Origin: Scyliorhinus canicula
Lineage: Eukaryota
NCBI RefSeq assembly: GCF_902713615.1
Contig: NC_052151.1
Span: 201,837,703 to 201,901,702, forward strand
DNA: 64,000 nt
Direction of reading: 5' to 3'
Shown in pieces: positions 150 to 61,680 of the stretch (position 1 is the stretch's first letter; every line of letters begins with the position of its first letter). Under the pieces are notes generated by a model. The model was not told the DNA's origin. It ran no database searches and was given only the letters and a program-made list of their open reading frames with translations. Position numbers and translations under genes: made by a program.

Positions 150-470
150 TTCAGAATCAGGCTGCCCGTCTCCCTGTGAATGGATCCCTGGGTCAGTCAG
201 TCTCCCTGTCTCCGGTAATCCCACATCGATTGATGGACATCGAGGTTATCTGGAAACAATCTTCACGCAGTCTCAGAATAGCACGATACAGCAAGGAACA
301 TGTCAGTTACGTTGGGTCTGAGGATTACCAGAAACGGATCAAATTTCATCCTGGGAACTTCAGTCTGCAAATCAATGACTTACAGAGAGAGGATGCTGGG
401 AGTTATGAGGTGTTTTTAACAAGAGATTCAGGAGAGGAAACTACAGAGACCATTCAACTGGACGTGTACG
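150..470 (+). CDS. Gene A exon 2: CD2/SLAM-type N-terminal IgV domain (no canonical disulfide)
   Basis: Polypyrimidine/CAG acceptor at 147-149 and GTAAGT donor at 471; 321 nt, phase 1-1. QNQAARLPVNGSLGQSVSL..VIWK..RIKFHPGNFSLQINDLQREDAGSYEV..TIQLDVY has the Ig V-set DxGxY motif and lacks the B- and F-strand Cys, as in CD2/SLAM V domains. Confidence 0.92.
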
Positions 471-1315
471 GTAAGTGAGATTCTATTGGACATGCCTGGT
501 TTTACCCAGTTGTTGAAACCTGCCTTGTAACATTTTCAGGGCAGATTTCCTGGATATTTCAGTTTCCAGAACTCACTCATTGCAGAATCCATAATGGTGT
601 AACTGATCTTAGGTAAAAACATCTCAGAATGTAAGAGCAGAATAAACCCTCTCTGGTGAAGGCCATTCAACCCCTCTTATCACGTTAAATTATTCTCTGA
701 GGTCAATTCATCTACATCGACTCTGCCATTCCGCTCTATTCCGCATATCTCTCGTTGTTTTCCACACATCTATCCATCTCACTTTGAAATAAACTAATTG
801 GCTCTGAAGCCACAGCTGTCTGAGGTAGAGAATCCCAAACATTCACATTCGCCTGAGTGAAGTAATTTCTCTTCAACTCTACCCAAACTGGCTGAGCCAT
901 TATTCCGTGACCCATCCTCCACCCAGACAAGATTCCCCAATCAGCATGAAGCAGCCTCTCAGCATCTACCCCATTAACTACTCCAGAAATGTTATACTTT
1001 TCAATGAGAGCATCTTTTTCGTGGTCTGACCAGGATATCGAGACCAGAAATGTGCACAGGGCTCCAAATGTGGTCTGACCAGGGATATGTTATTTGGAGA
1101 GTATAACTGTGCACAACGATCCAAATGTACTTTAAGCAAGGTTTCAGAAAAGTTGAACTTAACTTCCATCATTTTTAATTCTATCGCCATAACAAATGCA
1201 TTCCAGTGTTATGTATGAAAATACCAGCCTTACTCACAGGCACAGAGACCTCTCAATCTCTACCTAAACAGACATTTGTGAGACCATCACAGGCTCTCTT
1301 TGTTTAATATTGAAA

Positions 1316-1606
1316 GTGGGTGGCACAGTCGCACATTGGTTAGCACTGTTGCTTCACAGCTCCAGGGTCCCAGGTTTGATTCCCGGCTTGGGTCACTGTC
1401 TGTGCGGAGTCTGCACATTCTCCCCGTGTGTGCGTGAGTTTCCTCCGGGTGCTCCGGTTTCCTCCCACAAGTCCCAAAAGACGTGCTGTTAGGTGAATTG
1501 GACATTCTGAATTCTCCCTCCGTGTATCCCGAACATGTGGCGACTAGGGGCTTCTCACAGTAACTTCATTGCAATGTTAATGTAAGCCTACTTGTGACAA
1601 AAAAAT
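1316..1606 (+). mobile_element. tRNA-derived SINE (HE1-like)
   Basis: A-box TGGTTAGCAC, B-box-like GGTTTGATTCC, and conserved core GGGTTTCCTCCGGGTGCTCCGGTTTCCTCCCAC. Confidence 0.85.
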
Positions 1607-2150
1607 TATCATCAATTACACACCCATTCTGCCTCTGTAAACACTGAGTGAGTGGAGATTTACGTTATGTTCCACATATTCACACACTCACTCTGAAACA
1701 CCAGAATCAATCTCAGTGCAAAACTATTCCAATGTCGGAGGCGCCACAAGCATTAACCAAACACAGAGCAGACCGAGAGGGTGCACTCCACATAACAAGG
1801 GTCACGGGGAGCACTGGCTAGAGTCACCAATGAGACTGATCCAGAGAGAATACCTCGGATACAATCCCAAAATTGTGGAGATTCACAGAGAGTGGGAGTG
1901 AATGAGTGTTTGTGATTGTAGTGAAAGAGCGTGTAACACACTGCGTATTCCATCCATTCGTCATATTGACTCATGTGACTTGTTTGAACTCAGTGGGATG
2001 AGGGGAATGGTTAAGATGGTGGATGGAGGGATAAGGGAGGGGGGTCTTGTGAGGGTCTGAAGCAGGGGTGAGGGTGCTGGATATTGAGGTGTCCCACGAG
2101 GGTCGACATTCCTTCCTCATGTTTCTTTTGTCTTTCGATCTGATTGTCAG

Positions 2151-2447
2151 AGCCTGTGACAGGAACAAAGATCAGCCAAAAGACAGAGAACTGCACCATG
2201 ACCCTGACCTGCTCAGTGAACACAGGCGACAACATCAGCTTCATATGGTGGAAGGGACAAGAAGCATTGATAAACTATAGCTCCCATCATCTCTCCGACA
2301 ATGGACAGGAATTACAGCTTCACTTCACAGAGGAGACCAACGACGCTGTGTACATGTGTGAGGCCAGGAACCCAGTCAGTGAGTGCACTGCACAATTCAA
2401 CACTGCACAATCCAACTTGAGTGGCATCTGCAATGCAAACAGAAATG
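2151..2447 (+). CDS. Gene A exon 3: SLAM-type IgC2 domain
   Basis: Acceptor tgtcag at 2145-2150, donor GTGAGT at 2448; 297 nt, phase 1-1. EPVTGTKIS..ENCTMTLTCSV..YMCEARNPVS..SGIC has the four-Cys C2 pattern (C-x-x-x-L-T-C, Y-x-C-x-A-x-N-P-V-S, terminal C) typical of the SLAM family. Confidence 0.92.
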
Positions 2448-2518
2448 GTGAGTGTCACAGATAAAGTATTACACAGTCCAATATTCCAATTGTCCTGAGT
2501 GTGTTTGATGGGGACAGT

Positions 2519-2789
2519 TGTGGTAGTATGACTAGGGGTATTACGGTACCTGGGAGTGTCAGCTGCCATTGGTGCAGAGGACTCACTGCCCATTGGCCCA
2601 GGTATGTCATGTGCCTCTCAGCCGATTAGCTGAGAGGTAGGTAGCTCCGCCTACAAGGCGGGGTATAAGAACCCGGGTTCCCCGGTAGTCGGCCTTTCTT
2701 CTGTACGTCTGCTGCCAGGTCCACTTCTTGTGTATTAAAGCCTATCGTTCGGACTTTATCTACATTTCGTGTCCATTGATTGTGCATCA
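2519..2789 (+). mobile_element. Solo Gypsy-type LTR inserted in the 69-bp satellite
   Basis: TG...CA ends, 5-bp TSD ACAGT (2514-2518 and 2790-2794), TATA-like GTATAAG and ATTAAA. Confidence 0.85.
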
Positions 2790-2794
2790 ACAGT

Positions 2795-4713
2795 GTAAAG
2801 GGAGATTTACTCTGTATCTAACACCTGTGCTGTACCTGTCCTGGGAGTGTTTGATGAGGACAGTGTAGAGGGAGGTTTACTCTGTATCTAACCCCCTGCT
2901 GTACCTGTCCTGGGAGTGTTTGATGGGGACAGTGTAGAGGGAGATTTACTCTGTATCTAACCCCGTGCTGTACCTATCCTAGGAGTGTTTGATGGGCAGT
3001 GTAGAAGGAGCTGTACTCTGTATCTAACCCCGTGCTGTACCTGTCCTGGGAGTGTTTGATGGGGACAGTGTAGAGGAAGCTTTACTCTGTATCTAACCCC
3101 GTGCTGTACCTGTCCTGGGAGTGTTTGATGAGGACAGTGCAGAGGGGGCTTTACTCTGTATCTAACCCCATGCTGTACCTGTCCTGGGAGTGTTTGATGG
3201 GGACAGTGTAGAGGGAGCTTTACTCTGTATCTAACCCCGTGCTGGACCTGTCCTGCGAGTGTTTGATGGGGACAGTGTAGATGGAGCTTTACTCTGTATC
3301 TAACCCCGTGCTGTACCTGTCCTGCGAGTGTTTGATGGGGGCAGTGTAGAGGGAGCTTTACTCGATATCTAACCCCGTGCTGTACCTGTCCTGCGAGTGT
3401 TTGATGGGGACAGTGTAGAGGGAGATTTACTCTGTATCTAACCCCGTGCTGTACCTGTCCTGCGAGTGTTTGATGGGGACAGTGTAGAGGGAGCTTTACT
3501 CTGTATCTAACCCCGTGCTGTACCTGTCCTGGGTGTTTGATGAGGACAGTGCAGAGGGAGCTTTACTCTGTATCTAACCCCATGCTGTACCTGTCCTGGG
3601 AGTGTTTGATGGGGGCAGTGTAGAGGGAGCTTTACTCTGTATCTAACCCCGTGCTGTACCTGTCCTGCGAGTGTTTGATGGGGACAGTGTAGAGGGAGCT
3701 TTACTCTGTATCTAACCCTGTGCTGTACCTGTCCTGGGAGTGTTTGATGAGGACAGTGCAGAGGGAGCTTTACTCTGTATCTAACCCCATGCTGTACCTG
3801 TCCTGGGAGTGTTTGATGGGGGCAGTGTAGAGGGAGCTTTACTCTGTATCTAACCCCGTGCTGTACCTGTCCTGCGAGTGTTTGATGGGGACAGTGTAGA
3901 GGGAGCTTTACTCTGTATCTAACCCCGTGCTGTACCTGTCTTGGGAGTGTTTGATGGGGCAGTGCAGAGGGGGATTTACTCTGTATCTAACCCCGTGCTG
4001 TACCTGTCCTGCGAGTGTTTGATGGGGGCAGTGTAGAGGGAGCTTTACTCGATATCTAACCCCATGCTGTACCTGTCCTGGGAGTGTTTGATGGGGATAG
4101 TGTAGAGGGAGCTTTACTCAGTATCTAACCCGGTGCTGTACCTGCCCTGGGAGTGTTTGATGGGGACAGTGTAGAGGGAGCTTTACTCTGTATCTAACCC
4201 CGTGCTGTACCTGTCTTGGGAGTGTTTGATGGGGCAGTGCAGAGGGGGATTTACTCTGTATCTAACCCCGTGCTGTACCTGTCCTGCGAGTGTTTGATGG
4301 GGGCAGTGTAGAGGGAGCTTTACTCGATATCTAACCCCATGCTGTACCTGTCCCGGGAGTGTTTGATGGGGATAGTGTAGAGGGAGCTTTACTCAGTATC
4401 TAACCCCGTGCTGTACCTGTCCTCGGACTGTTTGATGGAGTGAATGTAGAGGGAGCTTTACTCTGTATCTAAAGCCGTGCTGTACCTGTCCTGGGAGTGT
4501 TTGATGGGAACAGTGTAGAGGGAGCTTTACTCCATATCTAACCCCGTGCTGTACCTGTCCTGGGACTGTTTGATGGCGACAGTGTAGAGGGAGCTTTACT
4601 CTGTATCTAACCCCGTGCTGTCCCTGTCCTGGGAGTGTTTGATAGGGACAGTGTAGAGGGAGCTTTACTCTGTTTCTAACCCCGTGCTGTACCTGTCCTG
4701 GGAGTGTTTGATG
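2795..4713 (+). repeat. 69-bp tandem satellite, about 28 units, gene A intron 3
   Basis: Unit GGGGACAGTGTAGAGGGAGCTTTACTCTGTATCTAACCCCGTGCTGTACCTGTCCTGGGAGTGTTTGAT; period measured from 3061 to 3130. Confidence 0.97.
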
Positions 4714-4752
4714 GTGTTATATTTCTTAGTTGTCACACATGGAAAAGTAATG

Positions 4753-8105: not shown

Positions 8106-8109
8106 TAAT

Positions 8110-8780: not shown

Positions 8781-8789
8781 TTCTACTTT

Positions 8790-16142: not shown

Positions 16143-16268
16143 AGCCAGTAACATTCCAGTATGAAACTTTGCTCTATATACTGTTGGTCTTCGTCCTCAT
16201 ACTCTCCTGCCTACTGATTATCTTGTGCAAACGAGCTTCAAGAAAGAAAAGGGACTTGACGTTAGGAG
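16143..16268 (+). CDS. Gene A exon 4: stalk, transmembrane and juxtamembrane
   Basis: Acceptor tttcccttttgcag ends 16142. (E)PVTFQYETLLYILLVFVLILSCLLIILCKRASRKKRDLTLG is a ~21-aa uncharged hydrophobic run followed by a basic stop-transfer. It ends at AG|GCAAGT (GC donor) in phase 1, matching both neighbouring exons. Confidence 0.82.
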
Positions 16269-18309: not shown

Positions 18310-18428
18310 ATTCGAATAAGCCGGGAAAAGAGCAGGAATGCGCCTGCGAGCCACAGACCATTTATGCTTTGGTGCAGCCAATGAAGAAACATCAAGAGAC
18401 ACGCCCTCCCCCAGAAGGAAATGAGATG
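18310..18428 (+). CDS. Gene A exon 5: cytoplasmic, ITSM 1 (TIYALV)
   Basis: Acceptor ctattcttccctttcaaag ends 18309, donor ATG|GTAAAG at 18429; phase 1-0. (D)SNKPGKEQECACEPQTIYALVQPMKKHQETRPPPEGNEM. Confidence 0.82.
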
Positions 18429-19379: not shown

Positions 19380-19475
19380 GTAGCGACGGAGACTGAGACA
19401 CCATTCACAGTCTACGATACGGTCAAGAACCCTGGAGTCCCAGTTTCTCAACTGCCTGATCAACAATGTGATTAA
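19380..19475 (+). CDS. Gene A exon 6: cytoplasmic, ITSM 2 (TVYDTV) and stop
   Basis: Acceptor ttttctacttgttctgtag ends 19379; phase 0, matching exon 5. VATETETPFTVYDTVKNPGVPVSQLPDQQCD*, TAA at 19473-19475. Confidence 0.82.
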   Translation, partial: VATETETPFTVYDTVKNPGVPVSQLPDQQCD

Positions 19476-22630: not shown

Positions 22631-23280
22631 GGGCCGGGATTCTCTCCTACCCGGGGGGGGGGGGGGGGGGGTCCCGGCGTGTTGGAGTGGCGTGAACCAC
22701 TCCGGCGTCGGGCACCTTTAGGGGCCCAGCCCTAACATTGAGGGGCTAGACCCGCCCCGGAGTGGTTCCCGCTCCGCCGACTGGCGTGAACAGCCTTTGG
22801 CGCCATGCCAGCCGGGGCCGAAAGGACTTCGCCGGCCGGCGTAGGTCCGCGCATGCGCCGGAGCGTCAGCGGCTGCTGACATCATCGCGGCGCATACGCA
22901 GGGGAGGGGGTCTCTTCTGCCTCCGCCATGGTAAAGACCATGGCGAAGGCGGAAGAAAAGGGTTATGGGCCAGGCCACTGTGGGGGCACCCCCCTGGGGT
23001 CAGATCGCCCCGCGCCCCTCCCAGGACCCTGGCGCCCGCGCCGCCAATCCTGCCGGTCAGGTAGGTGTTTTGATTCCCGCTGGCAGGAGAGGCCTGACAG
23101 AGGCGGGACTTAGGCCCATTGCGGGCCGGAGAATCGCCGCGGGGGGCCAGCCGACCGGCGCGGCGGAATTCCCGCCCCCGCCGAATCTCGGGTGGCGGAG
23201 AATTCATGACACGGCGGGGGCGGGATTGATGCCAGCCCAGGCAATTCTCCAACCTGCCGGGGGGGTCGGTGAATCCCGCT
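22631..23280. mobile_element. GC-rich MITE (Harbinger-like)
   Basis: TIR GGGCCGGGATTCTC..GAATCCCGC and internal GCGCATGCGC palindrome; an inverted sister copy lies at 35764-36485. Confidence 0.7.
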
Positions 23281-46009: not shown

Positions 46010-46970
46010 CTAATAAAACATAGAAAATAGGAGCAGGAGGAGGACATTACGCCCTTCAAGCCAGCGTTGCCATTCATTATGATCATGGCTGATCATCCAA
46101 TTCAATAGCTGAATCCTGTTTTCCCCTTCGCCCTATGTGCAATATCTAACTCCTTGAAAACATGCAATTTGTTGACCTCAACTCCTTCCTATGGTAACAA
46201 ATTCCACAGGCCGACCACTATCTGGGTGAAGAAATTTCTCCTCATCTCTGTCCTCAATGGTCCACCCCATATCCTCAGACTGAGAGCCCTGGTTCTGGAC
46301 AAACCTGCCATTGGGAACAGCCTTCCTGCGTCTACCCTGTCCCCATTGGGAACATCCTTCCTGCATCTACCCTGTCTCCATCGGGAACATCCTTCCTGCA
46401 TCTACCCTGTCTCCATCGGGAACATCCTTCCTGCATCTACCCTGTCCCCATCGGGAACATCCTTCCTGCATCTACCCTGTCCCCATCGGGAACATCCTTC
46501 CTGCATCTACCCTGTCCCCATTGGGAACATCCTTCCTGCATCTACCCTGTCTCCATCGGGAACATCCTTCCTGCATCTACCCTGTCTCCATCGGGAACAT
46601 CCTTCCTGCATCTACCCTGTCCCCATCGGGAACATCCTTCCTGCATCTACCCTGTCCCCATCGGGAACATCCTTCCTGCATCTACCCTGTCCCCATCGGG
46701 AACATCCTTCCTGCATCTACCCTGTCTCCATCGGGAACATCCTTCCTGCATCTACCCTGTCCCCATCGGGAACATCCTTCCTGCATCTACCCTGTCCCCA
46801 TCGGGAACATCCTTCCTGCATCTACCCTGTCCCCATCGGCAACATCCATCCTGCATCTACCTGTCCCCATCGGGAACATCCTTCCAGAATCTTCCCTGGC
46901 TTGTCCTCTTGGAATTTTATAGGTTTCTATGAGAGCCCCCCTCATTCTTCTTAACTCCAGTGAACACAAT
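46010..46970 (-). mobile_element. CR1 3' fragment containing a 35-bp minisatellite (46308-46882, about 16 units)
   Basis: SLELRRMRGALIETYKI..DRVDAGRLFPMAGLSRTR..FFTQIVV; unit CATCGGGAACATCCTTCCTGCATCTACCCTGTCCC. Confidence 0.9.
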
Positions 46971-48556: not shown

Positions 48557-48603
48557 TCATCCATCCAGCTCAGAGAGAGGTCCCTCTGTCCCTCCACGCA
48601 GCT
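48557..48603 (-). CDS. Putative alternative/ancestral last exon of gene B (QLRGGTEGPLSELDG*)
   Basis: Acceptor gactccctcacag is conserved in the paralogous copy (exon start 30270). It is in phase 1 with a repaired exon-4 donor, but that donor is disrupted in this sequence. Confidence 0.4.
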
Positions 48604-50065
48604 CTGTGAGGGAGTCAGGAATCACAATGTCAGCACAGAGGAGAGGGAGAGAACAGGAGAGGGAGAGGGAAGGGGAGGGGAGGGTGAGGAGGGAGAGGGA
48701 GGGATAGGGGAAGGAAGAGAGGGGAGGGAGAGGAGATGAAAGGGGAGGGAGTGCAGAGGGAGGAGATGATGGGAGGGAGAGGGTGCGGGAGGGAAGTGAA
48801 GGGAGATTTGAGAGGAGGGAAAGTTGAGGGAAAGGGAGGTGAAGGAGAGAATGGGGAAAGACGTTTTGAAGGAACAGGAGGAGAGCAAGGGAGAGGTGAG
48901 GAAAGTGACAGAGACAGGAGGGTGAGGGAGATGGGAAGGGGAGGGAATGGAAGAGAATGTGGAGTGGAGGGTCAATGGAGGAGGGCGCAGGAGGGGGGGA
49001 TGGATTGCAGGAAGTGAAGAAGATTTTAAATGAAGGGAGGTGGGGGAGGGGGATATGAGTCTACGGAAGGAGTCACCAACCTTTCCGAGTTTGCATCCAC
49101 GTTCTCCGACCCCGCAACTGGGTGCCTGAGAGAGGGCAGAGAGAAGGAGGGAGATCAGTGAGCTGACACAGTGCTGGATCCTAATCTCTATCGGTCTGTT
49201 TCTTCTCTTCATTGTCCTCTCTCTCCGTCACTCTACCTTCAATCTCCCTCTCACCCTACTTCTCATTCATTCTCTCTCCCATTCCATCTCACCACGCCAC
49301 ACTCATTCATTATCTCTCTCTCTTACTACCCCCACCGCTCGTCCTCTTTGCTGTGTCTCTCAACCCTGCCTCTCTCAACCACTTCTCTCTCACATTCTTT
49401 TCTCTCTGTCTGTTTCTCACTCTCTCTCCTTCCCCATGTCTGCGTGGGTTTCCTCGGGGTGCTCCAGTTTCCTGCCAAAGCCCAAAGGTGTGAAGAACAG
49501 TTGGATTGACCATCCTAAATTGCCCCTTAGTGTCCAAAGATATGGAGGTTGGGTAGATTGGTTATCTTGTGTCTCAGGACGTGCAGTTTTGGTGGGTTGC
49601 GGGGTTGTTCGATAGTTCGGGGGAGGGGGCCGAGATAGGGTCGGTACAGGGTTGTTGAGTCGAATGGCCTCATTCTGCACTGTAGGGGTTCTGTAGATTC
49701 TCTCTGTCACTTTTCCCCTCAATCACAGCCTCTCTTTTGTGGTCTTTCTCTCTCTTTCTGTCTCCTGCCCACTCATTCTTTCTCTCATTCTCTCCTCTCT
49801 CACTCAATGCATCGCTCAAATTGTCTCCCACCCTGGCTCTCGCAATCTCTCTCTCTTTCTTTAACTCTTTCAATTATTGGCCCTCTTTCTCTTCCAATCT
49901 CCCTCCCTCTCTTTTCTCCAACTCTACCTCCCTTTACCTCTCTCTCTGTCTCGCTCTGTCTCATTCTCTATTTGTCTCTCTTTCTCCATCACTCTGTCTC
50001 CATCATAATATCTAGGAATATTGAACATTAACACTCAGTACAATTCAGAAATGATGTCTGAATAC

Positions 50066-50175
50066 TCAACGTTTGCTGATCACTTGGACGATGACAATGA
50101 CCGAGAGCAGAATAGTCAGGATGGTGACAGAAATGATCAACTTCACATAACACGGAGAGCAACAGGATTGTTCAG
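50066..50175 (-). CDS. Gene B exon 4: Cys-rich stalk, TM and 3-aa tail, stop
   Basis: Strong acceptor tttctttccccttccccctccccag in phase 1. (A)EQSCCSPCYVKLIISVTILTILLSVIVIVQVISKR*; TGA at 50068-50066. Not in the ORF track; read by hand. Confidence 0.8.
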
Positions 50176-50270
50176 CTGGGGAGGGGGAAGGGGAAAGAAA
50201 AATAATTTTATAGAGACATATTTCAGAGCTCAGTCACAAAACCTTTCATCAATTCTTGACTCATCAAAGA

Positions 50271-53200
50271 ACATAGAACATAGAACACTACAGCGCAGTG
50301 TGGGCCCTTCGGCCCTCGATGTTGCGCCGACCTGTGAAACCATCTGAAGCCTATCTGACCTACACTATTCCATTTTCATCCATATGTCTATCCAGTGACC
50401 ACTTAAATGCCCTTAAAGTTGGCGAGTCTACTACTGTTGCAGGCAGGGTGTTCCACACCCCTACTACTCTCTGAGTAAAGAAACTGCCTCTGACATCTGT
50501 CCTATATCTACCACCCCTCAATTTAAAGCTATGTCCCCTCGTGTTCGTCATCACCATCCGAGGAAAAATATTCTCACTGTCCACCCTATCTAACCCTCTG
50601 ACTATCTTATATGTCTCTATTAAGTCACCTCTCAGCCTTTTCCTCTCTAACGAAAACAACCTCAAGTCCCTGAGCCTTTCCTCGTAAGACCTTCCTTCCA
50701 TACCAGGCAACATCCTAGTAAATCTCCTCTGAACCCTTTCCAAAGCTTCCACATCCTTCCTATAATGTGGTGACCAGAACTGCACACAGTACTCCAGGTG
50801 CGGCCGCACCAGAGTTATGTACAGCTGCAGCATGACCTTGTGGTTCCGAAACTCAATCCCTCTGCTTATAAAGGCTAGCACACCATATGCCTTCTTAACA
50901 GCCCTATAAACCTGGGTGGCAACTTTCAGGGATTTATGTACCTGGATGCCGAGATCTCTCTGTTCATCTACACTACCAAGAATCTTGCCATTAGCCCAGT
51001 ACTCTGCATTCCTGTTACTCCTTCCAAAGTGAACCATAAGAACATAAGAACATAAGAACATAAGAACTAGGAGCAGGAGTAGGCCATCTGGCCCCTCGAG
51101 CCTGCTCGGCCATTCAATGAGATCATGGCTGATCTTTTGTGGACTCAGCTCCACTTTCCGGCCTGAACACCATAACCCTTAATCCCTTTATTCTTCAAAA
51201 AACTATCTATCTTTACCTTAAAAACATGTAATGAAGGAGCCTCAACTGCTTCACTGGGCAAGGAATTCCATAGATTCACAACCCTTTGGGTGAAGAAGTT
51301 CCTCCTAAACTCAGTTCTAAATCTACTTCCCCTTATTTTGAGGCTATGCCCCCTAGTTCTGCTGTCACCCGCCAGTGGAAACAAGCTGCCCGCATCTATC
51401 CTATCTATTCCCTTCATAATTTTAAATGTTTCTATAAGATCCCCCCTCATCCTTCTAAATTCCAACGAGTACAGTCCCAGTCTACTCAACCTCTCCTCAT
51501 AATCCAACCCCTTCAGCTCTGGGATTAACCTAGTGAATCTCCTCTGCACACCCTCCAGCGCCAGTACGTCCTTTCTCAAGTAAGGAGACCAAAACTGAAC
51601 ACAATACTCCAGGTGTGGCCGCACTAACACCTTATACAATTGCAACATAACCTCCCTAGTCTTAAACTCCATCCCTCCAGCAATGAAGGACAAAATTCCA
51701 TTTGCCTTCTTAATCACCTGTTGCACTTGTAAACCAACCTTCTGTGACTCATGCACTAGCACACCCAAGTCTCTGTGAACAGCGGCATGCTTTAATATTT
51801 TATCGTTTAAATAATAATCCCGTTTGCTGTTATTCCTACCAAAATGGATAACCTCACATTTGTCAACATTGTATTCCATCTGCCAGACCCGAGCCCATTC
51901 ACTTAACCTATCCAAATCCCTCTGCAGACTTACAGTATCCTCTGCACTTTTCGCTTTACCACTCATCTTAGTGTCTTCTGCAAACTTGGACACATTGCCC
52001 TTGGTCCCCAACTCCAAATCATCAATGTAAATTGTGAACAATTGTGGGCCCAACACGGATCCCTGAGGGACACCACTAGCTACTGATCGCCAACCAGAGA
52101 AACACCCATTTATCCCAACTCTTTGCTTTCTATTAATTAATCAATCCTCTATCAATGCTACTACTTTACCCTTAATGCCATGCATCTTTTTCTTATGCAG
52201 CAACCTTTTGTGTGGCACCTTGTCAAAGGCTTTCTGGAAATCCAGATATACCACATCCATCGGCTCCCCGTTATCTACTGCACTGGTAATGTCCTCAAAA
52301 AATTCCACTAAATTAGTTAGGCACGACCTGCCTTTTACGAACCCATGCTGCGTCTGCCCAATGGGACAATTTCTATCCAGATGCCTCGCAATTTCTTCCT
52401 TGATGATAGATTCCAGCATCTTCCCTATTACCGAAGTTAAACTCACTGGCCTATAATTTCCTGCTTTCTGCCTACCTCCTTTTTTAAACAGTGGCGTCAC
52501 GTTTGCTAATTTCCAATCCACCGGGACCACCCCAGAGTCTAGTGAATTTCGGTAAATTATCACTAGTGCATCTGCAATTTCCCTAGCCATCTCTTTTAGC
52601 ACTCTGGGATGCATTCCATCAGGGCCAGGAGACTTGTCTACCTTTAGCCTCATTAGCTTGCCCATCACTCCCTCCTTAGTGATAACAATCGTCTCAAGGT
52701 CCTCACCTGTCATTGCCTCATTTCTATCAGTCACTGGCATGTTATTTGTGTCTTCCACTGTGAAGACCGACCCAAAAAACCTGTTCAGTTCCTCAGCCAT
52801 TTCCTCATTTCCCATTATTAAAACTCCCTTCTCATCCTCTAAAGGACCAATATTTACCTTAGCCATTCTTTTTTGTCTTATATGTTTGTAAAAACTTTTA
52901 CTGTCTGTTTTTATATTCTGAGCAAGTTTACTCTCATACTCTATCTTACTCTTCTTTATAGCTTTTTTAGTAGCTTTCTGTTGCCCCCTAAAGATTTCCC
53001 AGTCCTCTAATCTCCCAGCAATCTTTGCCACTTTATATGCTTTTTCCTTCAATTTGATACTCTCCCTTATTTCCTTAGATATCCACGGTCGATTTTCCCT
53101 CTTTCTTCCGTCCTTCCTTTTTGTTGGTATAAACCTTTGCTGAGCACTGTGAAAAATCGCTTGGAAGGTTCTCCACTGCTCCTCAACTGTTCCACCATAA

Positions 53201-55810
53201 AGTCTTAGCTCCCAGTCTACCTTAGCTAGTTCTTCTCTCATCCCCTTGTAATCTCCTTTGTTTAAACACAAAACACTAGTATTTGATTTTACTTTCTCAC
53301 CCTCCATCTGTATTTTAAATTCCACCATATTGTGATCGCTCCTTCCGAGAGGATCCCTAACCACCTCACACTTTTCCGCATTAAACTCCATCTGCCACCT
53401 CTCAGCCCAGCTCTGCAGCTTATCTATGTCCCTCTGTATCTTATAACATCCTTCAGCACTATCCACAACTCCACCGACCTTCGTGTCATCTGCAAATTTA
53501 CTAACCCATCCTTCTACACCCTCTTCCAGGTCATTTATAAAAATGACAAACAGCAGTGGCCCCAAAACAGATCCTTGCGGTACACCACTAGTAACTGAAC
53601 TCCAGGATGAACATTTGCTATCAACCACCACCCTCTGTCTTCTTTCAGCTAGCCAATTACTGATCCAAACCGCTAAATCACCTTCAATTCCATACTTACT
53701 TATTTTCTGCAATAGCCTACCGTGGGGAACCTTATCAAACGCCTTACTGAAATCCATATACACCACATCAACAGCTTTACCCTGATCCACCTGTTTGGTC
53801 ACCTTCTCAAAAAACTCAATAAGGTTTGTGAGGCATGACCTACCCTTCACAAAACCGTGTTGAGTATCGCTAATCAACTTGTTCTTTTCAAGATGATTAT
53901 AAACCCTATCTCTTATAACCTTTTCCAACATTTTACCCACAACCGAAGTAAGGCTCACAGGTCAATAATTACCAGGGTTGTCTCTACTCCCCTTCTTGAA
54001 CAAGGGGACAACATTTGCTATCCTCCAGTCTTCCAGCACTATTCCTGTCGACAAAGACGACATAAAGATCAAGGACAAAGGCTCTGCAATCTCCTCCCTG
54101 GCTTCCCAGAGAATCCTAGGATAAATCCCATCTGGCCCAGGGGACTTATCTATTTTGACATTTTCTAAAATTGCTAACACCTCCTCCTTTTGAACCTCTA
54201 TTCCATCTAGCCTGGTCGACTGAACCTGAGTGTTCTCCTCGACAACATTGTCTTTCTCCAGTGTAAACACTGATGAAAAATATCCATTTAATGCTTCCCC
54301 TATCTCCTCTGATTCCACACACAACTTTCCACTACTATCCTTGATTGGCCCTAATCTTACTCTAGTCATTCTTTTGTTCCTGATATACCTATAGAAAGCC
54401 TTAGGGTTTTCCTTGATCCTATCCGCCAACGACTTTTCGTGTCCTCTCCTCGCTCTTCTTAACTCTCCCTTTAGGTCCTTCCTGGCTAACTTGTAACTCT
54501 CAAGTGCCCTAACTGAGCCTTCATGTCTCATCCTAACATAAGCCTTCTTCTTCCTCTTGACAAGTGCTTCAACTTCCTTAGTAAACCACGGTTCCCTTGC
54601 TCGACAACTTCCTCCCTGCCTGACAGGTACATACCTATCAAGGACACGCAGTAGCTGTTCCTTGAAAAAGCTCCACATTTCGATTGTACCCATCCCCTGC
54701 AGTTTCCTTCCCCATCCTATACATCCTAAATCTTGCCGAATAGCATCATAAGTGCCCTTCGCCCAGCTATATTTATTGCCTTGCGGTATATACCTATCCC
54801 TGCCCATCACTAAAGTGAACATAACCGAATTGTGATCACTATCACCAAAGTGCTCACCTACATCTAAATCTAACACCTGGCCGGGTTCATTACCCAGTAC
54901 CAAATCCAATGTGGCCTCGCCCCTTGTTGGCCTGTCTACATACTGTGTCAGAAAACCCTCCTGCACACACTGCACAAAAACTGACCCATCTATAGCACTC
55001 GAACTATAGTATTTCCAGTCAATATTTGGAAAGTTAAAGTCCCCCATAACAACTACCCTGTTACTCTCGCTCCTGTCAAGAATCATCTTTGCAATCCTTT
55101 CCTCTACATCTCTGGAACTATTCGGAGGTCTATAGACAACTCCCAACAGGGTGACCTCTCCTCTACTGTTCCTCACCTCGGCCCATACTGCCTCAGTAGA
55201 CGAGTCCTCAAGCGTCCTTTCTACCGCCGTAATACTTTCCTTGATTAACAATGCCACACCCCCCCCTCTTTTACCATCTTCTCTGTTCTTACAGAAACAT
55301 CTAAATCCTGGAACCTGCAACAACCATTCCTGTCCCTGCTCTACCCATGTCTCCGAAATCGCCACAACATCGAGATCCCAGGTACAAACCCATGCTGCAA
55401 GCTCACCCACCTTATTCCGGATGCTCCTAGCGTTGAAGTAGACACACTTCAAACCAGCGCCCTGCTTGCCGGTGCCCTCTTTCGAATTTTTAAACCTATC
55501 CCTGACCTCATTACTCTCAACATCCTGTACACTGGGACTACAATTTAGGTTCCCATACCCCTGCTGAATTAGTTTAAACTCCCCCGAAGAGCACTAGCAA
55601 ATCTCCCCCCCAGGATATTGGTACCCCTCTGGTTCAGGTGAAGACCATCCTGTTTGTAGAGGTCCCACCTACCCCAGAATGAGCCCCAATTATCCAGGAA
55701 ACCAAAACCCTCCCTCCTGCACCATCCCTGTAGCCACGTGTTCAACTCCTCTCTCTCCTTATTTCTCACTTCGCTAGCACGTGGCACGGGTAACAACCCA
55801 GAGATAACAG
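50271..55810 (-). mobile_element. CR1 LINE (ORF1 end, EN, RT, 3' tail) split by a nested CR1
   Basis: ORF1 esterase end 55569-55810; ORF2 MKCVYFNARSIRNK..VAISETW; RT to 53364, resuming at 51031; tail (CATAGAA)n at 50271. Confidence 0.92.
51037..53358 (-). mobile_element. Younger 5'-truncated CR1 nested in the CR1 RT
   Basis: Tail (CATAAGAA)n at 51037-51067, flanked by AACCA (51032-51036 and 53359-53363); removing it restores CCAAAGTG-AACCA-CCTCACAC. Confidence 0.88.
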
Positions 55811-55844
55811 AGATAATAATCATAGGGTTCGTAATTCTCCCTCT

Positions 55845-56780
55845 ACACTGCCCCATCAAACACTCCCAGGACAGGTACTGCATGGGGTTAGATACAGAAT
55901 AAATCTCCCTCTACGCTGTCCCCATCAAATATTCCCAGGGCAGGCACAGCACGGGGTTAGATACAGAGTAAAGCTCACTCTACACTGTCCCCATCAAACA
56001 CTCCCAGGACAGGTACAGCACAGGGTTAGATACAGAGTAAAGCTCCCTCTACACTGTCCCCATCAAACACTCCCAGGACAGGTACAGCAAGGGGTTAGAT
56101 ACAGAGTAAAGCTCCCTCTACACTGTACCCATCAAACACTCCCAGGACAGGTACAGCACGGGGTTAGATACAGAGTAAAGCTCCCTCGACACTGTCCCCA
56201 TCAAACACTCGCAGGACAGGTACAGCACGGGGTTAGATACAGAGTAAAGCTCCCTCTACACTGTCCCCATCAAACATTCCCAGGGCAGGCACAGCACGGG
56301 GTTAGATACAGAGTAAAGCTCCCTCTACACTGTCCCTATCAAACACTCGCAGGACAGGTACAGCACGGGGTTAGATACAGAGTAAAGCTCCCTCTACACT
56401 GTCCCCATCAAACACTCCCAGGGCAGGCACAGCACGGGGTTAGATACAGAGTAAAGCTCCCAATCCACTGTCTCCATCAAACACTCCCAGGGCAGGCACA
56501 GCACGGGGTTAGATACAGAGTAAAGCTCCCTCTACACTGTCCCCATCAAACACTCCCAGGACAGGGACAGCATGGGGTTAGATACAGAGTAAAGCTCCCT
56601 CTACACTGTCCCCATCAAACACTCCCAGGACAGGTACAGCACGGGGTTAGATACAGAGTAAAGCTCCCTCGGCACTGTCCCCATCAAACACTCGCAGGAC
56701 AGGTACAGCACGGGGTTAGATACAGAGTAAAGCTCCCTCGGCACTGTCCCCATCAAACACTCGCAGGACAGGTACAGCAT
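55845..56780 (-). repeat. 69-bp tandem satellite, about 13 units, gene B intron 3
   Basis: Reverse complement of the 2795-4713 unit; starts about 50 nt after the C2 donor. Confidence 0.97.
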
Positions 56781-56832
56781 TTTACTGTGTAATATCTAAT
56801 GTTAGTTGCTTATTTCTCTCTCTATGACTCAC

Positions 56833-57132
56833 CAGGTTTGATTCCTTTACAGACGCCACTCACGTTGAATTGTGCAGTGTTGAATTGTGCAGTGCCCTCA
56901 CTGACTGGGTTCCTGGCCTCACACACGTACACAGCGTCGTTGGTCTCCTCTGTGAAGTGAAGCTGTAATTCCTGTCCATTGTCGGAGAGATGATGGGAGC
57001 TGCCGTTTCTCAATGCTTCTTGTCCCCTCCACCATCTGAAGCTGATGTTGTCGCCTGTGTTCACTGAGCAGGTCAGGGTCAGGTTACAATTCTCGATGAG
57101 TTTATAGCTGATCTTTGTTCCTGTCACAGGCT
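56833..57132 (-). CDS. Gene B exon 3: SLAM-type IgC2 domain
   Basis: 300 nt, phase 1-1, acceptor tggcag, donor GTGAGT. EPVTGTKISYKLIENCNLTLTCSV..YVCEARNPVSEG..SGVCKGIKP is about 80% identical to the gene A C2. Confidence 0.92.
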
Positions 57133-57978
57133 CTGCCATTCAAATCAATAGACAAAAGAAACATGAGGAAGGAATGTCGACCCTCGTGGGACACCTCAAT
57201 ATCCAGCACCCTCACCCCTACTTCAGACCCTCAAAAGAAAACTCTGACCCCCCCCCCTCCATCCCTCCATCCCTCCATCCACCATCTTAACCATCCCCTC
57301 ATCCCACTGAGTTCAAACAGGTCACATGTGTCAATATGCCGGCTGGATGGAACATACGCAGTGTGTTACACACTCTTTCACTACAATCACAAACACTCAT
57401 TCACTCCCACTCTGTGATTGTCCATGTTTTGGGATTGCATCCTGGGATTTCTGTCTGGATCAGTCTCATTGGTGACTCCCGTCAGTGGTCCCTGTGACCC
57501 TTGTTATGTGGAGTGCACCCTCTCAGTCTGACGGTTAACAGGTTAAACAAGATCAGTCTGGGTACACAATAGGGAGACTCTAGATACAGTCATCACTCTA
57601 TACCAAGCTCAAGGGAGATGGTAGTGTCGTGGTGATGTCACTGGATCAGTAATCCAGAGGCCCAGACTAATGATCTCCTGACACGGGTTCAAATCCCATC
57701 CCAGCAGCTGGTGGGATGGGCAACAAATGCTGGCCTTAACGGTGACATTCATATCCCAGGAAAGAATAAAATATCCTCTGATTCCTGGAACATATTCCAG
57801 GCTGTCGTCTCAGTTCTCATTAACAATGAGCAGCATTTCCACATGTCTGGACCAGGACTTGGTGGTTGGAGCAACAACTTGTTTATTTACATGGGGCAGG
57901 TGAAGGATTATACACAATGTCTAAAATTCTTTGTTTAGATTATGTTAAAACAGGTGAGATGTTGAGAGGCTGTCCCCC

Positions 57979-58264
57979 TGATGTACCATCAATTGATCGC
58001 GAGACGAGTTGCTGTACAAAAGTATTGCTTTAATCAGCTAGATGTTAGCCCTGCGGTCGATTACAGTATATGGACGACCACCGGGAGTACTGGGTATTTA
58101 TACCCCACCCTGGAGGCGGGGTTAACTCATCCTCTCGACCAATCGGGGAGCCGTCACATGACTGGTCTCAACCAACCGGTCGAGAGGCACATGACCGACC
58201 AGAGCCAATGGTAAGCCGGTGTTCTGCACCAATGGCAGGCAGCTATGCTAATCATACCTCCACA
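57979..58264 (-). mobile_element. Solo Gypsy-type LTR inside another LTR-like sequence (about 57932-58530)
   Basis: TG...CA ends, flanked by CCCC; the reverse complement begins TGTGGAGGTATGATTAG, like the LTR at 2519. Confidence 0.7.
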
Positions 58265-60611
58265 CCCCACATCCTCTCCCCGGCTTGGAGAGTCAGCCAA
58301 GGGTGTTGTTGCAATCTCACACCTCCACCACGTGGCTAAGAGCTAGTCTGGTTCAGTCAGACAGAGTAACCCCACTTAAGTTAGTAGAGAGTCGAACTCA
58401 CAGAGAACTGTGCTAACTGTGCTATTAGTTCAATAAATCAGATTGAACCAACTTCAAGGTCTGGAGTATCTTTCTGATCTAAGCTGCATCCTGTTGCAGC
58501 CAGTGTTGGACCAGTGTACCTAATCCGACAGCCTCTCCATTGTTGCCACATTCAGCTGGTAGTGTGGCGACCAGAATTGAACACTATACTCCAAGTGCAA
58601 CCTAACTAAGGTTCTATACAGCTGCAACATGACTTGCCAATGTTTATACTCAATGCCTCGGCCAATGAAGGCAATCATGCTGTATACCTTCTTGGCTAAC
58701 TTCTCCACCTGTGTTGCCTCTTTCAGTGAACTGTGGACCTTTGCATCCAGATCCCTCTGACTGCCAATTTTCTTAAGGGTTGTGACGGAGAGATTTCCAG
58801 GTATCTGCTGCCCTTGTCCTTCTAGACGGTAGTGGTCGAGGGTTTGGAAGGTGTTGCCTGAGGAACCTTGGGGAGTTGCTGCAGTGCATCTTGTAGATGG
58901 TACACACGGCTGCTGCTGTGCGTCGGTGGGAGGGAGAGAGCAATGTTGAGAATGGTGTACCAATCAAGTGGACTGCTTTGTCCTGGATGGTGTCGAGCTT
59001 CTTGAGTGCTGTTGGAGCTGCACACATCCAGGCAAGTGGAGAGTTTTCCATCACACTCCTGACTTGTGCCTTGTAGATGGTGGACAGGTTTTAGGAGGTC
59101 AGGAGGTGAGTTACTCACTGCAGGATTCTCAGCCTCTGACCTGCTCTTGGGGCCACAGTATTTATATGGCTGGGTTCAGTTCAGCTTCTGATCAATGGTA
59201 ACCTCCCCAGGAAGCTGACTGTGGGGGATTCAGCAATGGTAATGCCATTGAATGTCAAGGGTCGATGATTCGATCCTCTCCTGTAGGAGATGGTCATGGC
59301 CTGGCACTTAAGGTGAAAATGTTACTTCCCACTTTGCAGCCTAAGCCTGGATATTGTCCAGCGTTCTTGCTGCGTTTGGACATGGACTGCTTCACTATCT
59401 GAGGAGTCGCAAATGGTGCTGAACATTGTGCAGTCATCGGCAAATAGGGAGTCACAGAATCCTCCAGCTCAGAAAAGGCCCTTCAGCCCATCAACTCTGA
59501 GCTGGTGAAAAACAACCACCTAACTATTCTAGTCCCATTTTCCAGCACTTTTTCCTCACATCCCGTCTAAACCTCCTGCCCTTGAACTTAAATCTATGCC
59601 CCCTGGTCATTGAGCTCTCCACCAAGGGGAAATGTTTCTTCCTGTCTATCTATGCCCCTCATAATTGTATACATCTCAATCATGTCCCCCTCTCAGTCTC
59701 CTCTGCTCCAAGGAAAACAACCCCAGTCTGTCCAACCTCTCTTCATAACTAACACTCTCCAGCCCCGGCAATATGCTGGTAAACCTCCTCTGCTCCCTTT
59801 CCAGGGCGATCACATCCCTCCCATAATGTGGATTCCAGAACTGCGCACATCTGACCTGATGTTGGAAGGAGGGTCACTGTTGAAGCAGCTGGAAATGGTT
59901 GGTCCGAGGACACTACCCTGAGGAACTCCTGTAGTGATGTCTTGAACTGCCCCCCTGAAAAGGCCCAGCAAGTGACTGAGTTCAAGGGCAATTAGGGATG
60001 GGCAATAAAGGCTGGCCGTGTCAGTGACGTCCACAGGAAAGAATAAAATATCCCCCAACTCCTGGAACATTTTGGCAGCAGTCCTCTCTGTTCTCAGTAA
60101 CAATGAGCAGCATCTCCAAATGTCTGGACCAGGACACGGTGGTTGGAGCAACAACTCGTTTATTTACATGGGGCAGGGGAAGGATTATACACAATGTCTA
60201 AAATTCTTTTGTGTGTTTGACAGGTTAGATGTCGAGAGGCTGTTCCCCCACTTGGACAGGGTAGAATCAGAGGGGTCACAGTATCTCAGGGTTACGGGGT
60301 CAGCCCATTCCAGACTGAGATGAAGAGAACGTTCTTCAGTCAGAGGGTCTGCAGATTTGGAATTCTCTCTCTCTCCCTGGGAGAGCTCGGGTTTCTCACT
60401 CGATGAGGGTATTTGAGACTGAGATGGGCAATGTTTGTACAGAAGTGGGATTGAGGGATTTTGCGATTGGGTGGGATGATAGAGTTGATGTACCTGATCA
60501 GACAGGATCTTATTGAACTTTGGAACAGGCTCGAGGGGCTGAATGGCCTCCTCTCAATCCTATCTTTCAGTGATCAGTAAAGCTCAGTCTATCCAATAGA
60601 ATCTCACTTAC

Positions 60612-60932
60612 CGTACACGTCCAGTTGAATGGTCTCTGGAGTTTCCACTCCTGAAACTTTTGTTAAAACCACCTCATAACTCCCAGCATCCTCTCTCTGT
60701 AAGTCACTGATTTGCAGACTGAAGTTCCCAGGATGAAATTTGATCCGTTTCTGGTAATCCTCAGACCCAAAGTAACTGACATGTTTCTTGCTGTATCGTG
60801 CTATTCTGAGTCTGCGTGAAGATCGTTTCCAGATAACCTCGACATCCATCAATCCATGTGGGATTACTGGAGACAGGGAGATTGACTGACCCAGGGATCC
60901 ATTCACAGGGAGACGAGCAGCCTGATTCTGAA
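60612..60932 (-). CDS. Gene B exon 2: CD2/SLAM-type IgV domain
   Basis: 321 nt, phase 1-1, with the same splice sites as gene A exon 2; 16 nt differences from it (hand count). Confidence 0.92.
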
Positions 60933-61625
60933 CTGAGGGAACAAGAGGAGACAGTCAGTGAGTGCGGAACGAGACAAGCTCAGTGACTGGAGGCAGAATT
61001 TCAATTCATAGCCCCATACCATTCAGGAAGATGCCATTCAACCCATCGTGCACATGCTAGCTCTGTGACAGAGCAAGCTAATTCATCCCACTCACCCCTC
61101 CTTCCCCAACTCCCTGTAAGTTTCCCCCCTTCCAGTGTTTCTCCCATTCCCCCTTTCTGGAAGTTCCTATTGAGTCTGCTCCCACCACCCTTTCAGACAG
61201 AACCTTCCAGATCACAACAACTCTCTGTGTAAAAACATTTCTCCTCATCCTCATCTCCCCCTCTGCTTCTTTTACTGATTCTCTTCAATCTGTGTCCCTC
61301 TCGTTCCCCACCCTCCTGTCACTGGAAACACTTCCTCCTTCTTTACTCCATCTGAACACTTCCTGATTTTGACCGTCTCGATTCAATCCCCCCCCCCCCC
61401 TTAACTTTCTCTGCTCGAAGAACAACCCCAGCTTCTCCAGTCTCTCCGCACCGACTGAAGTCCCTCATTCCCGGAACCATTCCGGTAAATCTTCCTCTGT
61501 ACCTCTCCCCGAGGGCTTGGCAGTGCTCAAGGAAGGATTTGGACATCAACGCAAATGAGGAAGCAAAGAAAGTTCAGAGAGAGAGAGAGAGAGAGAGAGA
61601 ACCGGAAACACTGAATCAAACTCAC

Positions 61626-61680
61626 AGACTGATAGGGAGAGAGCCAGCGAACAACAGATGAACAATTCCCCAAACTCCAT
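61626..61680 (-). CDS. Gene B exon 1: signal peptide
   Basis: gaagATGG start at 61680 encodes MEFGELFICCSLALSLSV plus T, followed by a GTGAGT donor. The 55-nt phase-1 exon joins the V exon in frame (T+TT=Phe). Confidence 0.82.

What the first reader, a model, noticed from the sequence alone, without database searches (positions are those of the whole stretch)
150..61680. Inverted pair of shark SLAM/CD2-family receptors: one ectodomain, two unrelated signalling modules
Seen: two convergent (tail-to-tail) genes with V domains about 88% and C2 domains about 80% identical in protein. Gene A continues into an uncharged TM and a tail of about 85 aa with two ITSMs. Gene B continues into a non-homologous TM with a Lys, a CCSPC stalk and no tyrosine motif. 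Established: this architecture defines paired receptors (SIRPa/b, Siglec-5/14, LILRB/A, CD300), and the CD2/SLAM family also produces duplicated receptor-ligand pairs (CD2-CD58, CD244-CD48). Inference: a paired-receptor or receptor/ligand SLAM system in a cartilaginous fish. Several key exons are missing from the ORF track, so automated annotation could miss the pairing. Whether it is undescribed needs a literature and database check.
Basis: partly seen in the sequence, partly recalled or inferred. Interest (0 to 1): 0.92.

Follow-up and report, generated by a model that had tools for sequence, protein, structure and literature searches.

The report
Paired catshark SLAM receptors, shared ectodomain
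Two neighbouring immune-receptor genes of the small-spotted catshark carry almost the same outer part on two unrelated membrane and tail parts, and in five shark species the outer parts stay alike within each species, as in the paired receptors of mammals.

Summary
The window is Scyliorhinus canicula DNA with two convergent CD2/SLAM-family genes. Their V exons are 95% identical in DNA and 88% in protein; their C2 exons are 88% and 85%. Gene A continues into an uncharged TM and an 84-aa tail with two ITSMs (TIYALV, TVYDTV). Gene B continues into a CCSPC stalk and a TM with a Lys near its outer end.

All seven predicted junctions match the RefSeq models XP_038656728.1 (A) and XP_038656735.1 (B), so annotation did not miss them. 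Assembled contigs from public runs, whose RNA origin is the tool's guess, show B's 60612/57132 and 56833/50175 joints.

One correction: B's TM exon splices out before the apparent TGA into two small exons. This gives a 35-aa basic tail without tyrosine.

New here: in five shark species the A-type and B-type ectodomains group by species (86-93% within, 56-79% between). Leaders, TMs and tails group by type. B-type monophyly is rejected on ectodomain columns (p-AU 4e-5). That points to gene conversion confined to the V-C2 exons. The basic TM residue is invariant in nine B-type proteins, two of them probably batoid.

Whether B is an adaptor-coupled counterpart or a ligand is untested. I found no paper describing this. 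The scan had noted this stretch, and other CD2/SLAM genes near it, before.

The parts
150..470 (+). Gene A, V-domain exon (phase 1-1, no Cys)
   Evidence: in RefSeq model XP_038656728.1
2151..2447 (+). Gene A, C2-domain exon
16143..16268 (+). Gene A, uncharged TM exon, GC donor
   Evidence: used by the RefSeq model
18310..18428 (+). Gene A, cytoplasmic exon with ITSM 1 (TIYALV) and PPEGNEM
19380..19475 (+). Gene A, last coding exon with ITSM 2 (TVYDTV) and the stop
61626..61680 (-). Gene B, B-type leader exon (MEFGELFICCSLALSLSV)
   Evidence: the leader type recurs in S. torazame, Mustelus and Cetorhinus
60612..60932 (-). Gene B, V-domain exon
   Evidence: joint 60612/57132 in contigs of X1 and X4
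56833..57132 (-). Gene B, C2-domain exon
   Evidence: its 3' end is the 29-letter loose end of the TM-exon contigs
50071..50175 (-). Gene B, stalk plus TM exon (AEQSCCSPCYVKLIISVTILTILLSVIVIVQVISK), 105 nt, phase 1-1
   Evidence: Contigs of X1, X2 and X3 join it to C2 upstream and to exon 6 downstream; module conserved in 9 proteins
49081..49125 (-).
48557..48603 (-). Gene B, last coding stretch (...GPLSELDG, stop); the exon runs on as 3' UTR below 48300
79..505 (.). Homogenised tract 1 (V exon plus short flanks), inverted copy at 60577-61003, 95% nt
   Evidence: 71 nt upstream of the exon 100% identical
1769..2453 (.). Homogenised tract 2 (end of intron 2 plus C2 exon), inverted copy at 56827-57530, 88% nt
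2790..4714 (.). 69-bp satellite after the C2 exon of A (28 copies); the same satellite lies at 55837-56779 after the C2 exon of B; A-B homology ends here
50266..55452 (-). CR1-like LINE (endonuclease and RT ORFs, (ATGTTCT)n tail) in B's C2-TM intron; it ends 90 nt before the TM exon

Best explanation
Genes A and B are a conserved pair of elasmobranch SLAM-family receptors.

Shown:
- Both encode a CD2/SLAM-type V-C2 ectodomain.
- A is a classical SLAM receptor with an uncharged TM and two ITSMs.
- B carries an 86%-identical ectodomain on a separate module: its own leader, a Cys-rich stalk, a TM with an invariant basic residue near the outer end, and a short basic tail.
- B's mRNA is spliced as the RefSeq model predicts.
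- In five shark species the V-C2 part groups by species, while leader, TM and tail group by type.

Inferred:
- The V and C2 exons are repeatedly homogenised between the two genes by gene conversion, so both keep seeing the same or a similar ligand. For SLAM receptors that ligand is probably the family's own ectodomain in trans.
- A signals through SAP/EAT-2-type or SHP-type SH2 proteins at its ITSMs.
- B pairs through its TM Lys with an acidic-TM ITAM adaptor. The outer position of the charge suits an FcR-gamma/CD3-zeta-type adaptor better than DAP12. B would then give a different, probably activating, signal.
For: Family:
- The V domain has no Cys. Its best PDB sequence hits are SLAMF5 2pkd and SLAMF6 2if7. 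Pfam gives V-set, plus Receptor_2B4 just above its cut-off for A's V domain and just below it for B's.
- An AlphaFold2 model of B's ectodomain (pLDDT 86.5) best matches CD2, CD48, CD58 and NTB-A.

Gene models:
- The spliced CDS reproduces XP_038656735.1 (B) in full and XP_038656728.1 (A) from the V exon to the stop.
- Contigs from two samples and studies join C2 -> TM -> exon 6 -> exon 7 of B with GT..AG introns.
- The V -> C2 joint appears in X1 and X4.

Pairing:
- Ectodomain identity between A-type and B-type is 86-93% within a species and 56-79% between species.
- TM plus tail of the B type is 58-82% identical across species. A versus B is 14-28%.
- In the tree, A and B pair within Mustelus (100/99), S. 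torazame (100/99), Carcharodon (100/100) and S. canicula (85/77).
- The AU test rejects B-type monophyly on ectodomain columns (delta lnL 461, p 4.4e-5).
- Leaders are type-specific on the 5' side. The exchanged tract is therefore internal, which fits conversion rather than a single crossover.
- In the window, homology starts 71 nt before the V exon and ends 6 nt after the C2 exon.

TM module:
- The basic residue is invariant in 9 B-type proteins. Two of them probably come from skates or rays and carry Arg.
- A variant in run X1/X2 changes K to R.

Precedent: Xenopus CD2/SLAM members with an FcR-gamma-type NxxR TM (PMC4536121).

Binding: the A-V with B-V complex scored 0.60 against a best control of 0.00. 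The tool calls this weak support: the mark was reached by 51 of 78 solved complexes and 2 of 108 mismatched pairs. The three runs agree in at least 97% of contacts and the partner's pLDDT is at least 84.
Against: - No adaptor binding was tested.
- The Lys lies at the very edge of the hydrophobic stretch (YVK-LIISV...), so it could be an ordinary flanking residue.
- The TM lacks the NxxR motif of known FcR-gamma partners.
- Orthologues in S. torazame and Cetorhinus carry a C-terminal GP.YELD motif, so the tail may have a role of its own. S. canicula and Carcharodon have Ser in place of that Tyr.
- Gene models of the other species were not checked against RNA, and orthology inside a multigene cluster is uncertain.
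- I named the AU-test group after seeing the alignment.
- Gene A's junctions rest on the RefSeq model alone.
- The runs are RNA only by the tool's guess.
- The complex score may reflect memory of solved SLAM dimers.
Confidence: 0.6

Rival explanations
1. B is a non-signalling partner of A: a membrane ligand or decoy, playing the part that CD48 or CD58 play for CD244 or CD2. It presents the shared ectodomain but sends no adaptor signal.
For: - The tail is short, with no Tyr in S. canicula.
- RefSeq names the S. torazame and Cetorhinus orthologues 'CD48 antigen-like'.
- SLAM receptors usually bind family members, and the A-V with B-V prediction gave weak support (0.60 against a best control of 0.00).
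- A Cetorhinus model (P0164) lacks the TM exon, and the exon's 1-1 phase keeps the frame, so a soluble form is possible.
Against: - The TM is as well conserved across orders as the ectodomain, or better, and its basic residue never varies. A passive anchor would not need that.
- It is not a GPI-signal ending, because 35 basic residues follow the TM.
- The RefSeq names are automatic.
Confidence: 0.25
2. The within-species likeness comes from repeated recent duplication and exon shuffling in a birth-and-death cluster, not from gene conversion. The A-B 'pair' then has no maintained functional tie.
For: - The region is a multigene CD2/SLAM cluster. Earlier scan notes report other family genes up- and downstream, and Cetorhinus has tandem B-type genes.
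- A B-type leader relic lies at 36733-36786.
- A contig from X1 shows a third V variant.
Against: - Both flanks of the shared tract (leader on one side, TM and tail on the other) stay type-specific in every species examined. This needs a double exchange each time, which is conversion in effect.
- The V tract (95%) and the C2 tract (88%) differ in age inside one gene pair.
Confidence: 0.1
3. B signals through its own tail, by the conserved basic stretch and the C-terminal GP.YELD motif, rather than through a TM-associated adaptor.
For: The tail ending ...GGTEGP[AV]YELD[AG] is conserved between S. torazame and Cetorhinus, and its frame and length are conserved in all B types.
Against: - The Tyr is Ser in S. 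canicula and Carcharodon.
- YELD fits none of the ITAM, ITIM or ITSM patterns.
Confidence: 0.08

Closest known systems
Mammalian SLAM-family ITSM receptors (SLAMF1, SLAMF5/CD84, SLAMF6/NTB-A, Ly9)
   Same: Gene A has a V domain without the intradomain disulfide, a C2 domain with conserved Cys pairs, a single TM and two TxYxx[V/I] motifs. Its best sequence and fold matches lie in this family.
   Different: No one-to-one orthology to any mammalian member was shown. RefSeq names vary (SLAM-like, Ly-9-like, SLAMF5-like, CD48-like) for near-identical ectodomains. The PPEGNEM spacer between the ITSMs is an elasmobranch feature.
Paired receptors homogenised by gene conversion (Siglec-5/Siglec-14, SIRP alpha/beta; from my own knowledge)
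   Same: Near-identical ligand-binding domains sit on a tyrosine-motif tail in one gene and on a charged-TM, short-tail module in the neighbour. The ectodomains evolve in concert within species while the signalling modules stay orthologous.
   Different: The fold family differs (CD2/SLAM). The tyrosine-motif partner carries switch motifs (ITSM), not pure ITIMs. The genes are convergent, not tandem. The adaptor for B is unknown.
Xenopus expanded CD2/SLAM family with NxxR transmembrane members (Guselnikov et al. 2011, cited in PMC4536121)
   Same: A SLAM-family ectodomain is combined with an adaptor-type charged TM in a non-mammalian vertebrate.
   Different: The shark module has no NxxR. It reads S..C..[KR]...L..LL...IS and is preceded by a Cys-rich stalk. 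Concerted evolution of an A/B pair is shown here; I could not read the 2011 paper to see whether it reports the same.
CD48 / CD58 (short or GPI-anchored CD2-family ligands)
   Same: V-C2 ectodomain with a short or absent signalling tail. The fold match to CD48 and CD58 is as good as to CD2.
   Different: B has a conserved TM with a basic residue and a 35-aa tail, which does not look like a GPI signal. Its ectodomain is a near copy of its ITSM neighbour, not a diverged ligand.

Membership tests
CD2/SLAM family | N-terminal V-set domain lacking the canonical intradomain disulfide | tested here: met
   Neither V exon encodes a Cys. Pfam V-set E 1e-9, with Receptor_2B4 and SLAM as weaker hits. PDB best hits are SLAMF5 and SLAMF6.
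CD2/SLAM family | Two-domain V-C2 ectodomain with the CD2-like fold | tested here: met
   AlphaFold2 model with pLDDT 86.5. The top five Foldseek PDB hits are CD2, CD48/CD2, CD2, CD58 and NTB-A, with TM-scores of 0.69-0.81.
SLAM subfamily (ITSM receptors) | One or more TxYxx[V/I] switch motifs in the cytoplasmic tail | tested here: met
   Gene A has TIYALV and TVYDTV, conserved in A-type relatives of sharks and rays. Gene B has none.
SLAM subfamily (ITSM receptors) | Phospho-ITSM binding of SAP/EAT-2 | not testable with these tools
   Needs biochemistry.
Paired immune receptors | Highly similar ectodomains in linked genes | tested here: met
   86% aa over V-C2. The genes are convergent, with about 28 kb between their coding ends (19475 and 48557).
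Paired immune receptors | One member with a tyrosine-motif tail, the other with a short tail and a charged TM residue | tested here: met
   A has two ITSMs. B has K in YVKLIISV and a 35-aa tail without Tyr. The basic residue is invariant in 9 relatives. The Lys sits at the edge of the TM, so its role is inferred.
Paired immune receptors | Association of the charged-TM member with an ITAM adaptor (DAP12, FcR-gamma, CD3-zeta) | not testable with these tools
   Needs co-expression and co-precipitation.
Paired immune receptors | Concerted evolution of the ectodomains | tested here: met
   Species-wise clustering of A and B ectodomains. The AU test rejects type-wise clustering, p 4.4e-5. Leader, TM and tail are type-specific.
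FcR-gamma-coupled receptors with an NxxR TM | NxxR motif at the start of the TM | tested here: not met
   The B-type TM has no Asn three residues before the basic residue.
GPI-anchored CD2-family ligands (CD48 type) | C-terminal hydrophobic GPI signal with no cytoplasmic tail | tested here: not met
   The spliced mRNA encodes 35 mostly basic residues after the TM.

The most novel reading that the evidence does not exclude
The B-type module (Cys-rich stalk, TM with an invariant Lys/Arg, short basic tail) is an elasmobranch-wide activating module that couples SLAM ectodomains to an ITAM adaptor. The A/B pair has been kept as a paired-receptor system by gene conversion since before the lamniform-carcharhiniform split. 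That would make it one of the oldest documented paired receptors, and the first in the SLAM family with proven concerted evolution.
Probability: 0.4. Interest if true: 0.65.

Novelty: new variant of a known kind. Interest (0 to 1): 0.55.

Why it matters
Paired receptors are read as traces of host-pathogen arms races, and mammalian SLAM receptors are known entry points for viruses and sensors of bacteria. In mammals the SLAM family is not organised as classical ITSM / charged-TM pairs.

A conserved pair in sharks would show that this design was applied to the SLAM fold early in jawed vertebrates. The ectodomains are kept alike by conversion and the second module reaches back to the shark-ray ancestor.

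It also gives a concrete system for asking which ITAM adaptors cartilaginous fish use. Both genes are already in RefSeq, so the value lies in the pairing and its evolution, not in gene discovery.

Tried and rejected
- Is the TM exon of B part of the LINE in the intron? No. The LINE ends in an (ATGTTCT)n tail at about 50266, 90 nt before the exon's acceptor.
- Relics of a B-type TM exon in gene A's 13.7-kb intron, or of A-type TM/ITSM exons near B: none found by tblastn.
Contigs and the RefSeq model splice at AAAC|GT, and no contig covers the read-through.
- GPI anchor for B: rejected because of the 35-aa tail.
- Positive selection between the A and B V domains: 13 replacement against 3 silent changes, dN/dS about 1.3 (C2 about 0.9). 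That is relaxed, but not distinguishable from neutral with so few sites.
- A search for more B-type tails with the TM/tail region alone found only the S. torazame orthologue at E <= 0.01. The other members came from the wider searches.
- NCBIfam has no model for these proteins.
- Neighbourhoods of the Carcharodon and Cetorhinus genes could not be read, because no DNA was served. Orientation and adjacency of A and B in other species are therefore unknown.
- Five literature searches found no paper on SLAM-family genes of cartilaginous fish.
- Complex prediction on the A and B V domains gave only weak support (0.60 against a best control of 0.00). I do not count it as evidence of binding.


Full report
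**1. What is in the sequence**

On the plus strand:
- a V exon (150-470);
- a C2 exon (2151-2447);
- a TM exon (16143-16268);
- two cytoplasmic exons (18310-18428 and 19380-19475) carrying TIYALV and TVYDTV.

On the minus strand:
- a leader (61626-61680);
- a V exon (60612-60932);
- a C2 exon (56833-57132);
- an exon at 50175 downwards encoding AEQSCCSPCYVKLIISVTILTILLSVIVIVQVISK.

All have polypyrimidine-AG acceptors. Donors are GT, except the gene A TM exon, which has a GC donor. The V domains are 87.7% identical in protein and the C2 domains 85%.

Self-comparison of the window shows two inverted homologous tracts. One is 79-505 against 61003-60577 (95% nt). The other is 1769-2453 against 57530-56827 (88% nt). 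Both are followed by the same 69-bp satellite (2790-4714 and 55837-56779), after which homology ends. Neither TM exon has a second copy in the window.

**2. Identity of the genes**

A search of protein representatives with B's V exon, then a homologue search, identified the genome as Scyliorhinus canicula and returned both genes as RefSeq models.
- Gene A is 'signaling lymphocytic activation molecule-like': XP_038656728.1, 336 aa. Isoform X2 is XP_038656729/30.
- Gene B is 'T-lymphocyte surface antigen Ly-9-like': XP_038656735.1, 290 aa.

Joining the window's exons reproduces B in full, and A from its V exon to the stop. A's leader lies upstream of the window. The worry that annotation would miss the exons does not hold.

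**3. Transcript evidence for gene B**

The runs used are Logan contigs of catshark runs. Their RNA origin is the tool's guess, but they carry spliced forms.
- Contigs of X1 and X4 skip 57133-60611 with CT..AC ends, which is GT..AG on the minus strand. This joins V to C2.
- Contigs of 1116 nt in X1 and X3 (different samples and studies), and shorter ones in X2, start with 29 letters that are the reverse complement of 56834-56862. That stretch is the B-specific end of the C2 exon.
- They then run through 50175-50071, 49125-49081 and 48603-48300, and go on further as 3' UTR.

So the junction 56833/50175 is real. The tail is QVISKRTQLRGRRTWMQTRKELRGGTEGPLSELDG: 35 residues, basic, no tyrosine. No contig covers the read-through.

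**4. The intron of B**

The 6.6-kb intron between C2 and TM holds the satellite and a CR1-like LINE. The LINE has endonuclease and reverse-transcriptase ORFs and ends in an (ATGTTCT)n tail at about 50266. The TM exon starts 90 nt further on, so it is not LINE sequence. Without these insertions the TM exon lay close to the C2 exon.

**5. Family membership**

- The V domains contain no cysteine, which is the hallmark of CD2/SLAM V domains.
- The best sequence matches of the V domain among solved structures are SLAMF5 and SLAMF6.
- The whole protein matches SLAMF6 across V and C2.
- An AlphaFold2 model of B's ectodomain (pLDDT 86.5) has CD2, CD48/CD2, CD2, CD58 and NTB-A as its five best PDB fold matches.
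- Gene A adds the two ITSMs.

**6. The pair is old and evolves in concert**

The homologue list holds A-type and B-type proteins from S. torazame, Mustelus asterias, Cetorhinus maximus and Carcharodon carcharias. The alignment shows three type-specific parts.
- Leader: B type is MEFGKW.ICCSLALSVS; A type is M..NF....L.CLS.SAFR.VQ.
- TM.
- Tail.

Between them lies a V-C2 block full of species-specific residues shared by A and B.

The identities bear this out.
- Ectodomain, A versus B within a species: 86-93%.
- Ectodomain, between species: 56-79%.
- TM plus tail, B types across species: 58-82%.
- TM plus tail, A types across species: 37-66%. Carcharodon's P0161, whose model ends in a short aberrant tail, falls below this range.
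- TM plus tail, A versus B: 14-28%.

A maximum-likelihood tree of the ectodomain columns pairs A with B in Mustelus (100/99), S. torazame (100/99), Carcharodon (100/100) and S. canicula (85/77). Forcing the B types together costs 461 log-likelihood units (p-AU 4.4e-5). I named that group after seeing the alignment.

Both sides of the shared block stay type-specific, so each homogenisation needs a double exchange, which is gene conversion. Inside the window the V tract (95%) is younger than the C2 tract (88%). This suggests several events.

The other species' models were not checked against RNA. Their A and B ectodomains are not identical, however, so they are separate loci and not one exon set used twice.

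**7. The B-type module**

Nine proteins carry it, among them two that cluster with ray sequences: Rhinoraja P0169, and P0023 of unknown source. Invariant positions are a Ser and a Cys of the stalk, the basic residue (Lys in sharks, Arg in those two), L..LL in the helix and IS at the inner end.

A variant in run X1/X2 changes the Lys to Arg and the next Leu to Met. The charge is kept.

The TM exon is 105 nt and phase 1-1. One Cetorhinus model lacks it in frame, so a soluble form is conceivable.

The tail ends in GP.YELD in S. torazame and Cetorhinus. The Tyr is Ser in S. canicula and Carcharodon.

**8. How it most likely works**

Shown: the architecture, the splicing of B, and the conservation and concerted evolution described above.

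Inferred:
- A signals through SH2 proteins at its ITSMs.
- B pairs through the TM Lys with an acidic-TM ITAM adaptor. The outer position of the charge corresponds to the Asp of FcR-gamma and CD3-zeta rather than the mid-membrane Asp of DAP12 (my own knowledge).
- Conversion keeps both receptors on the same ligand, probably the family's own ectodomain.

A complex prediction of the A and B V domains scored 0.60 against a best control of 0.00. The tool rates this as weak support: the mark was reached by 51 of 78 solved complexes and 2 of 108 mismatched pairs. The three runs agree in at least 97% of contacts and the partner's pLDDT is at least 84. The score may stem from memory of solved SLAM dimers.

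The main rival is that B is a ligand or decoy without signalling. The conserved TM argues against it but does not exclude it.

**9. Comparison with what is known, and novelty**

The closest known systems are these.
- Mammalian SLAM ITSM receptors, for gene A.
- Siglec-5/14 and SIRP-type pairs, for the design and the conversion.
- The Xenopus CD2/SLAM expansion, which includes members with an NxxR TM (PMC4536121).

The shark module fails the NxxR test. Five literature searches found nothing on SLAM genes in cartilaginous fish. That is a limit of the library, not proof of absence.

I rate it a new variant of a known kind. The genes are known to annotation. The pairing, its age and its concerted evolution appear undescribed.

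Earlier notes of this scan had already flagged this stretch and other CD2/SLAM genes up- and downstream of it.

Noticed in passing
window 60612-60933 and 56879-57132 (run X1); 50071-50175 (runs X1/X2): A 640-nt contig joins a C2 exon identical to B's to a V exon that differs from B at 20 positions. Nine of these are A-like and nine match neither gene. Its first 64 letters do not fit B's leader. In the same sample the TM exon differs at 5-6 positions, including K to R. This is either a divergent allele of B, a further paralogue, or a chimeric assembly.
   Followed up: partly
window 36733-36786 (-): A B-type leader look-alike (MEFRKWFI*SSLALSISV) with an in-frame stop. No V or C2 relic is detectable nearby, and it lies next to LTR-like sequence. 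It may be the remnant of a third B-type gene.
   Followed up: partly
window 50266-55452 (-): A CR1-like LINE with largely open endonuclease and RT reading frames and an (ATGTTCT)n tail, in the same orientation as gene B, inside B's C2-TM intron. A fragment of the same family lies at 20387-20558.
   Followed up: partly
window 30207-36485 (-), with 22631-23279 as an inverted match to 35767-36485: An LTR retrotransposon (protease, RT and integrase ORFs) between the 3' ends of the two genes. A 650-bp stretch of it recurs inverted 13 kb away.
   Followed up: no
window 16268/16269: The gene A TM exon uses a GC donor (GCAAGT). The RefSeq model accepts it, but I could not check it against reads.
   Followed up: partly
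window 2790-4714 and 55837-56779: The 69-bp satellite after both C2 exons has summed contig depths in the hundreds of thousands in three of the four runs laid, so it is a genome-wide, transcribed repeat and not something private to this duplication.
   Followed up: no
window 13259-13908, 16472-18013, 28849-29888, 46308-46898: Four further minisatellites with periods of 21, 33, 37 and 35 bp. The first two lie in introns of gene A and give long spurious ORFs.
   Followed up: no
P0164 (Cetorhinus), P0023 (probably batoid): Variants of the B type: one model without the TM exon but with the B tail in frame, and one with a V domain joined directly to the B-type TM (no C2).
   Followed up: no
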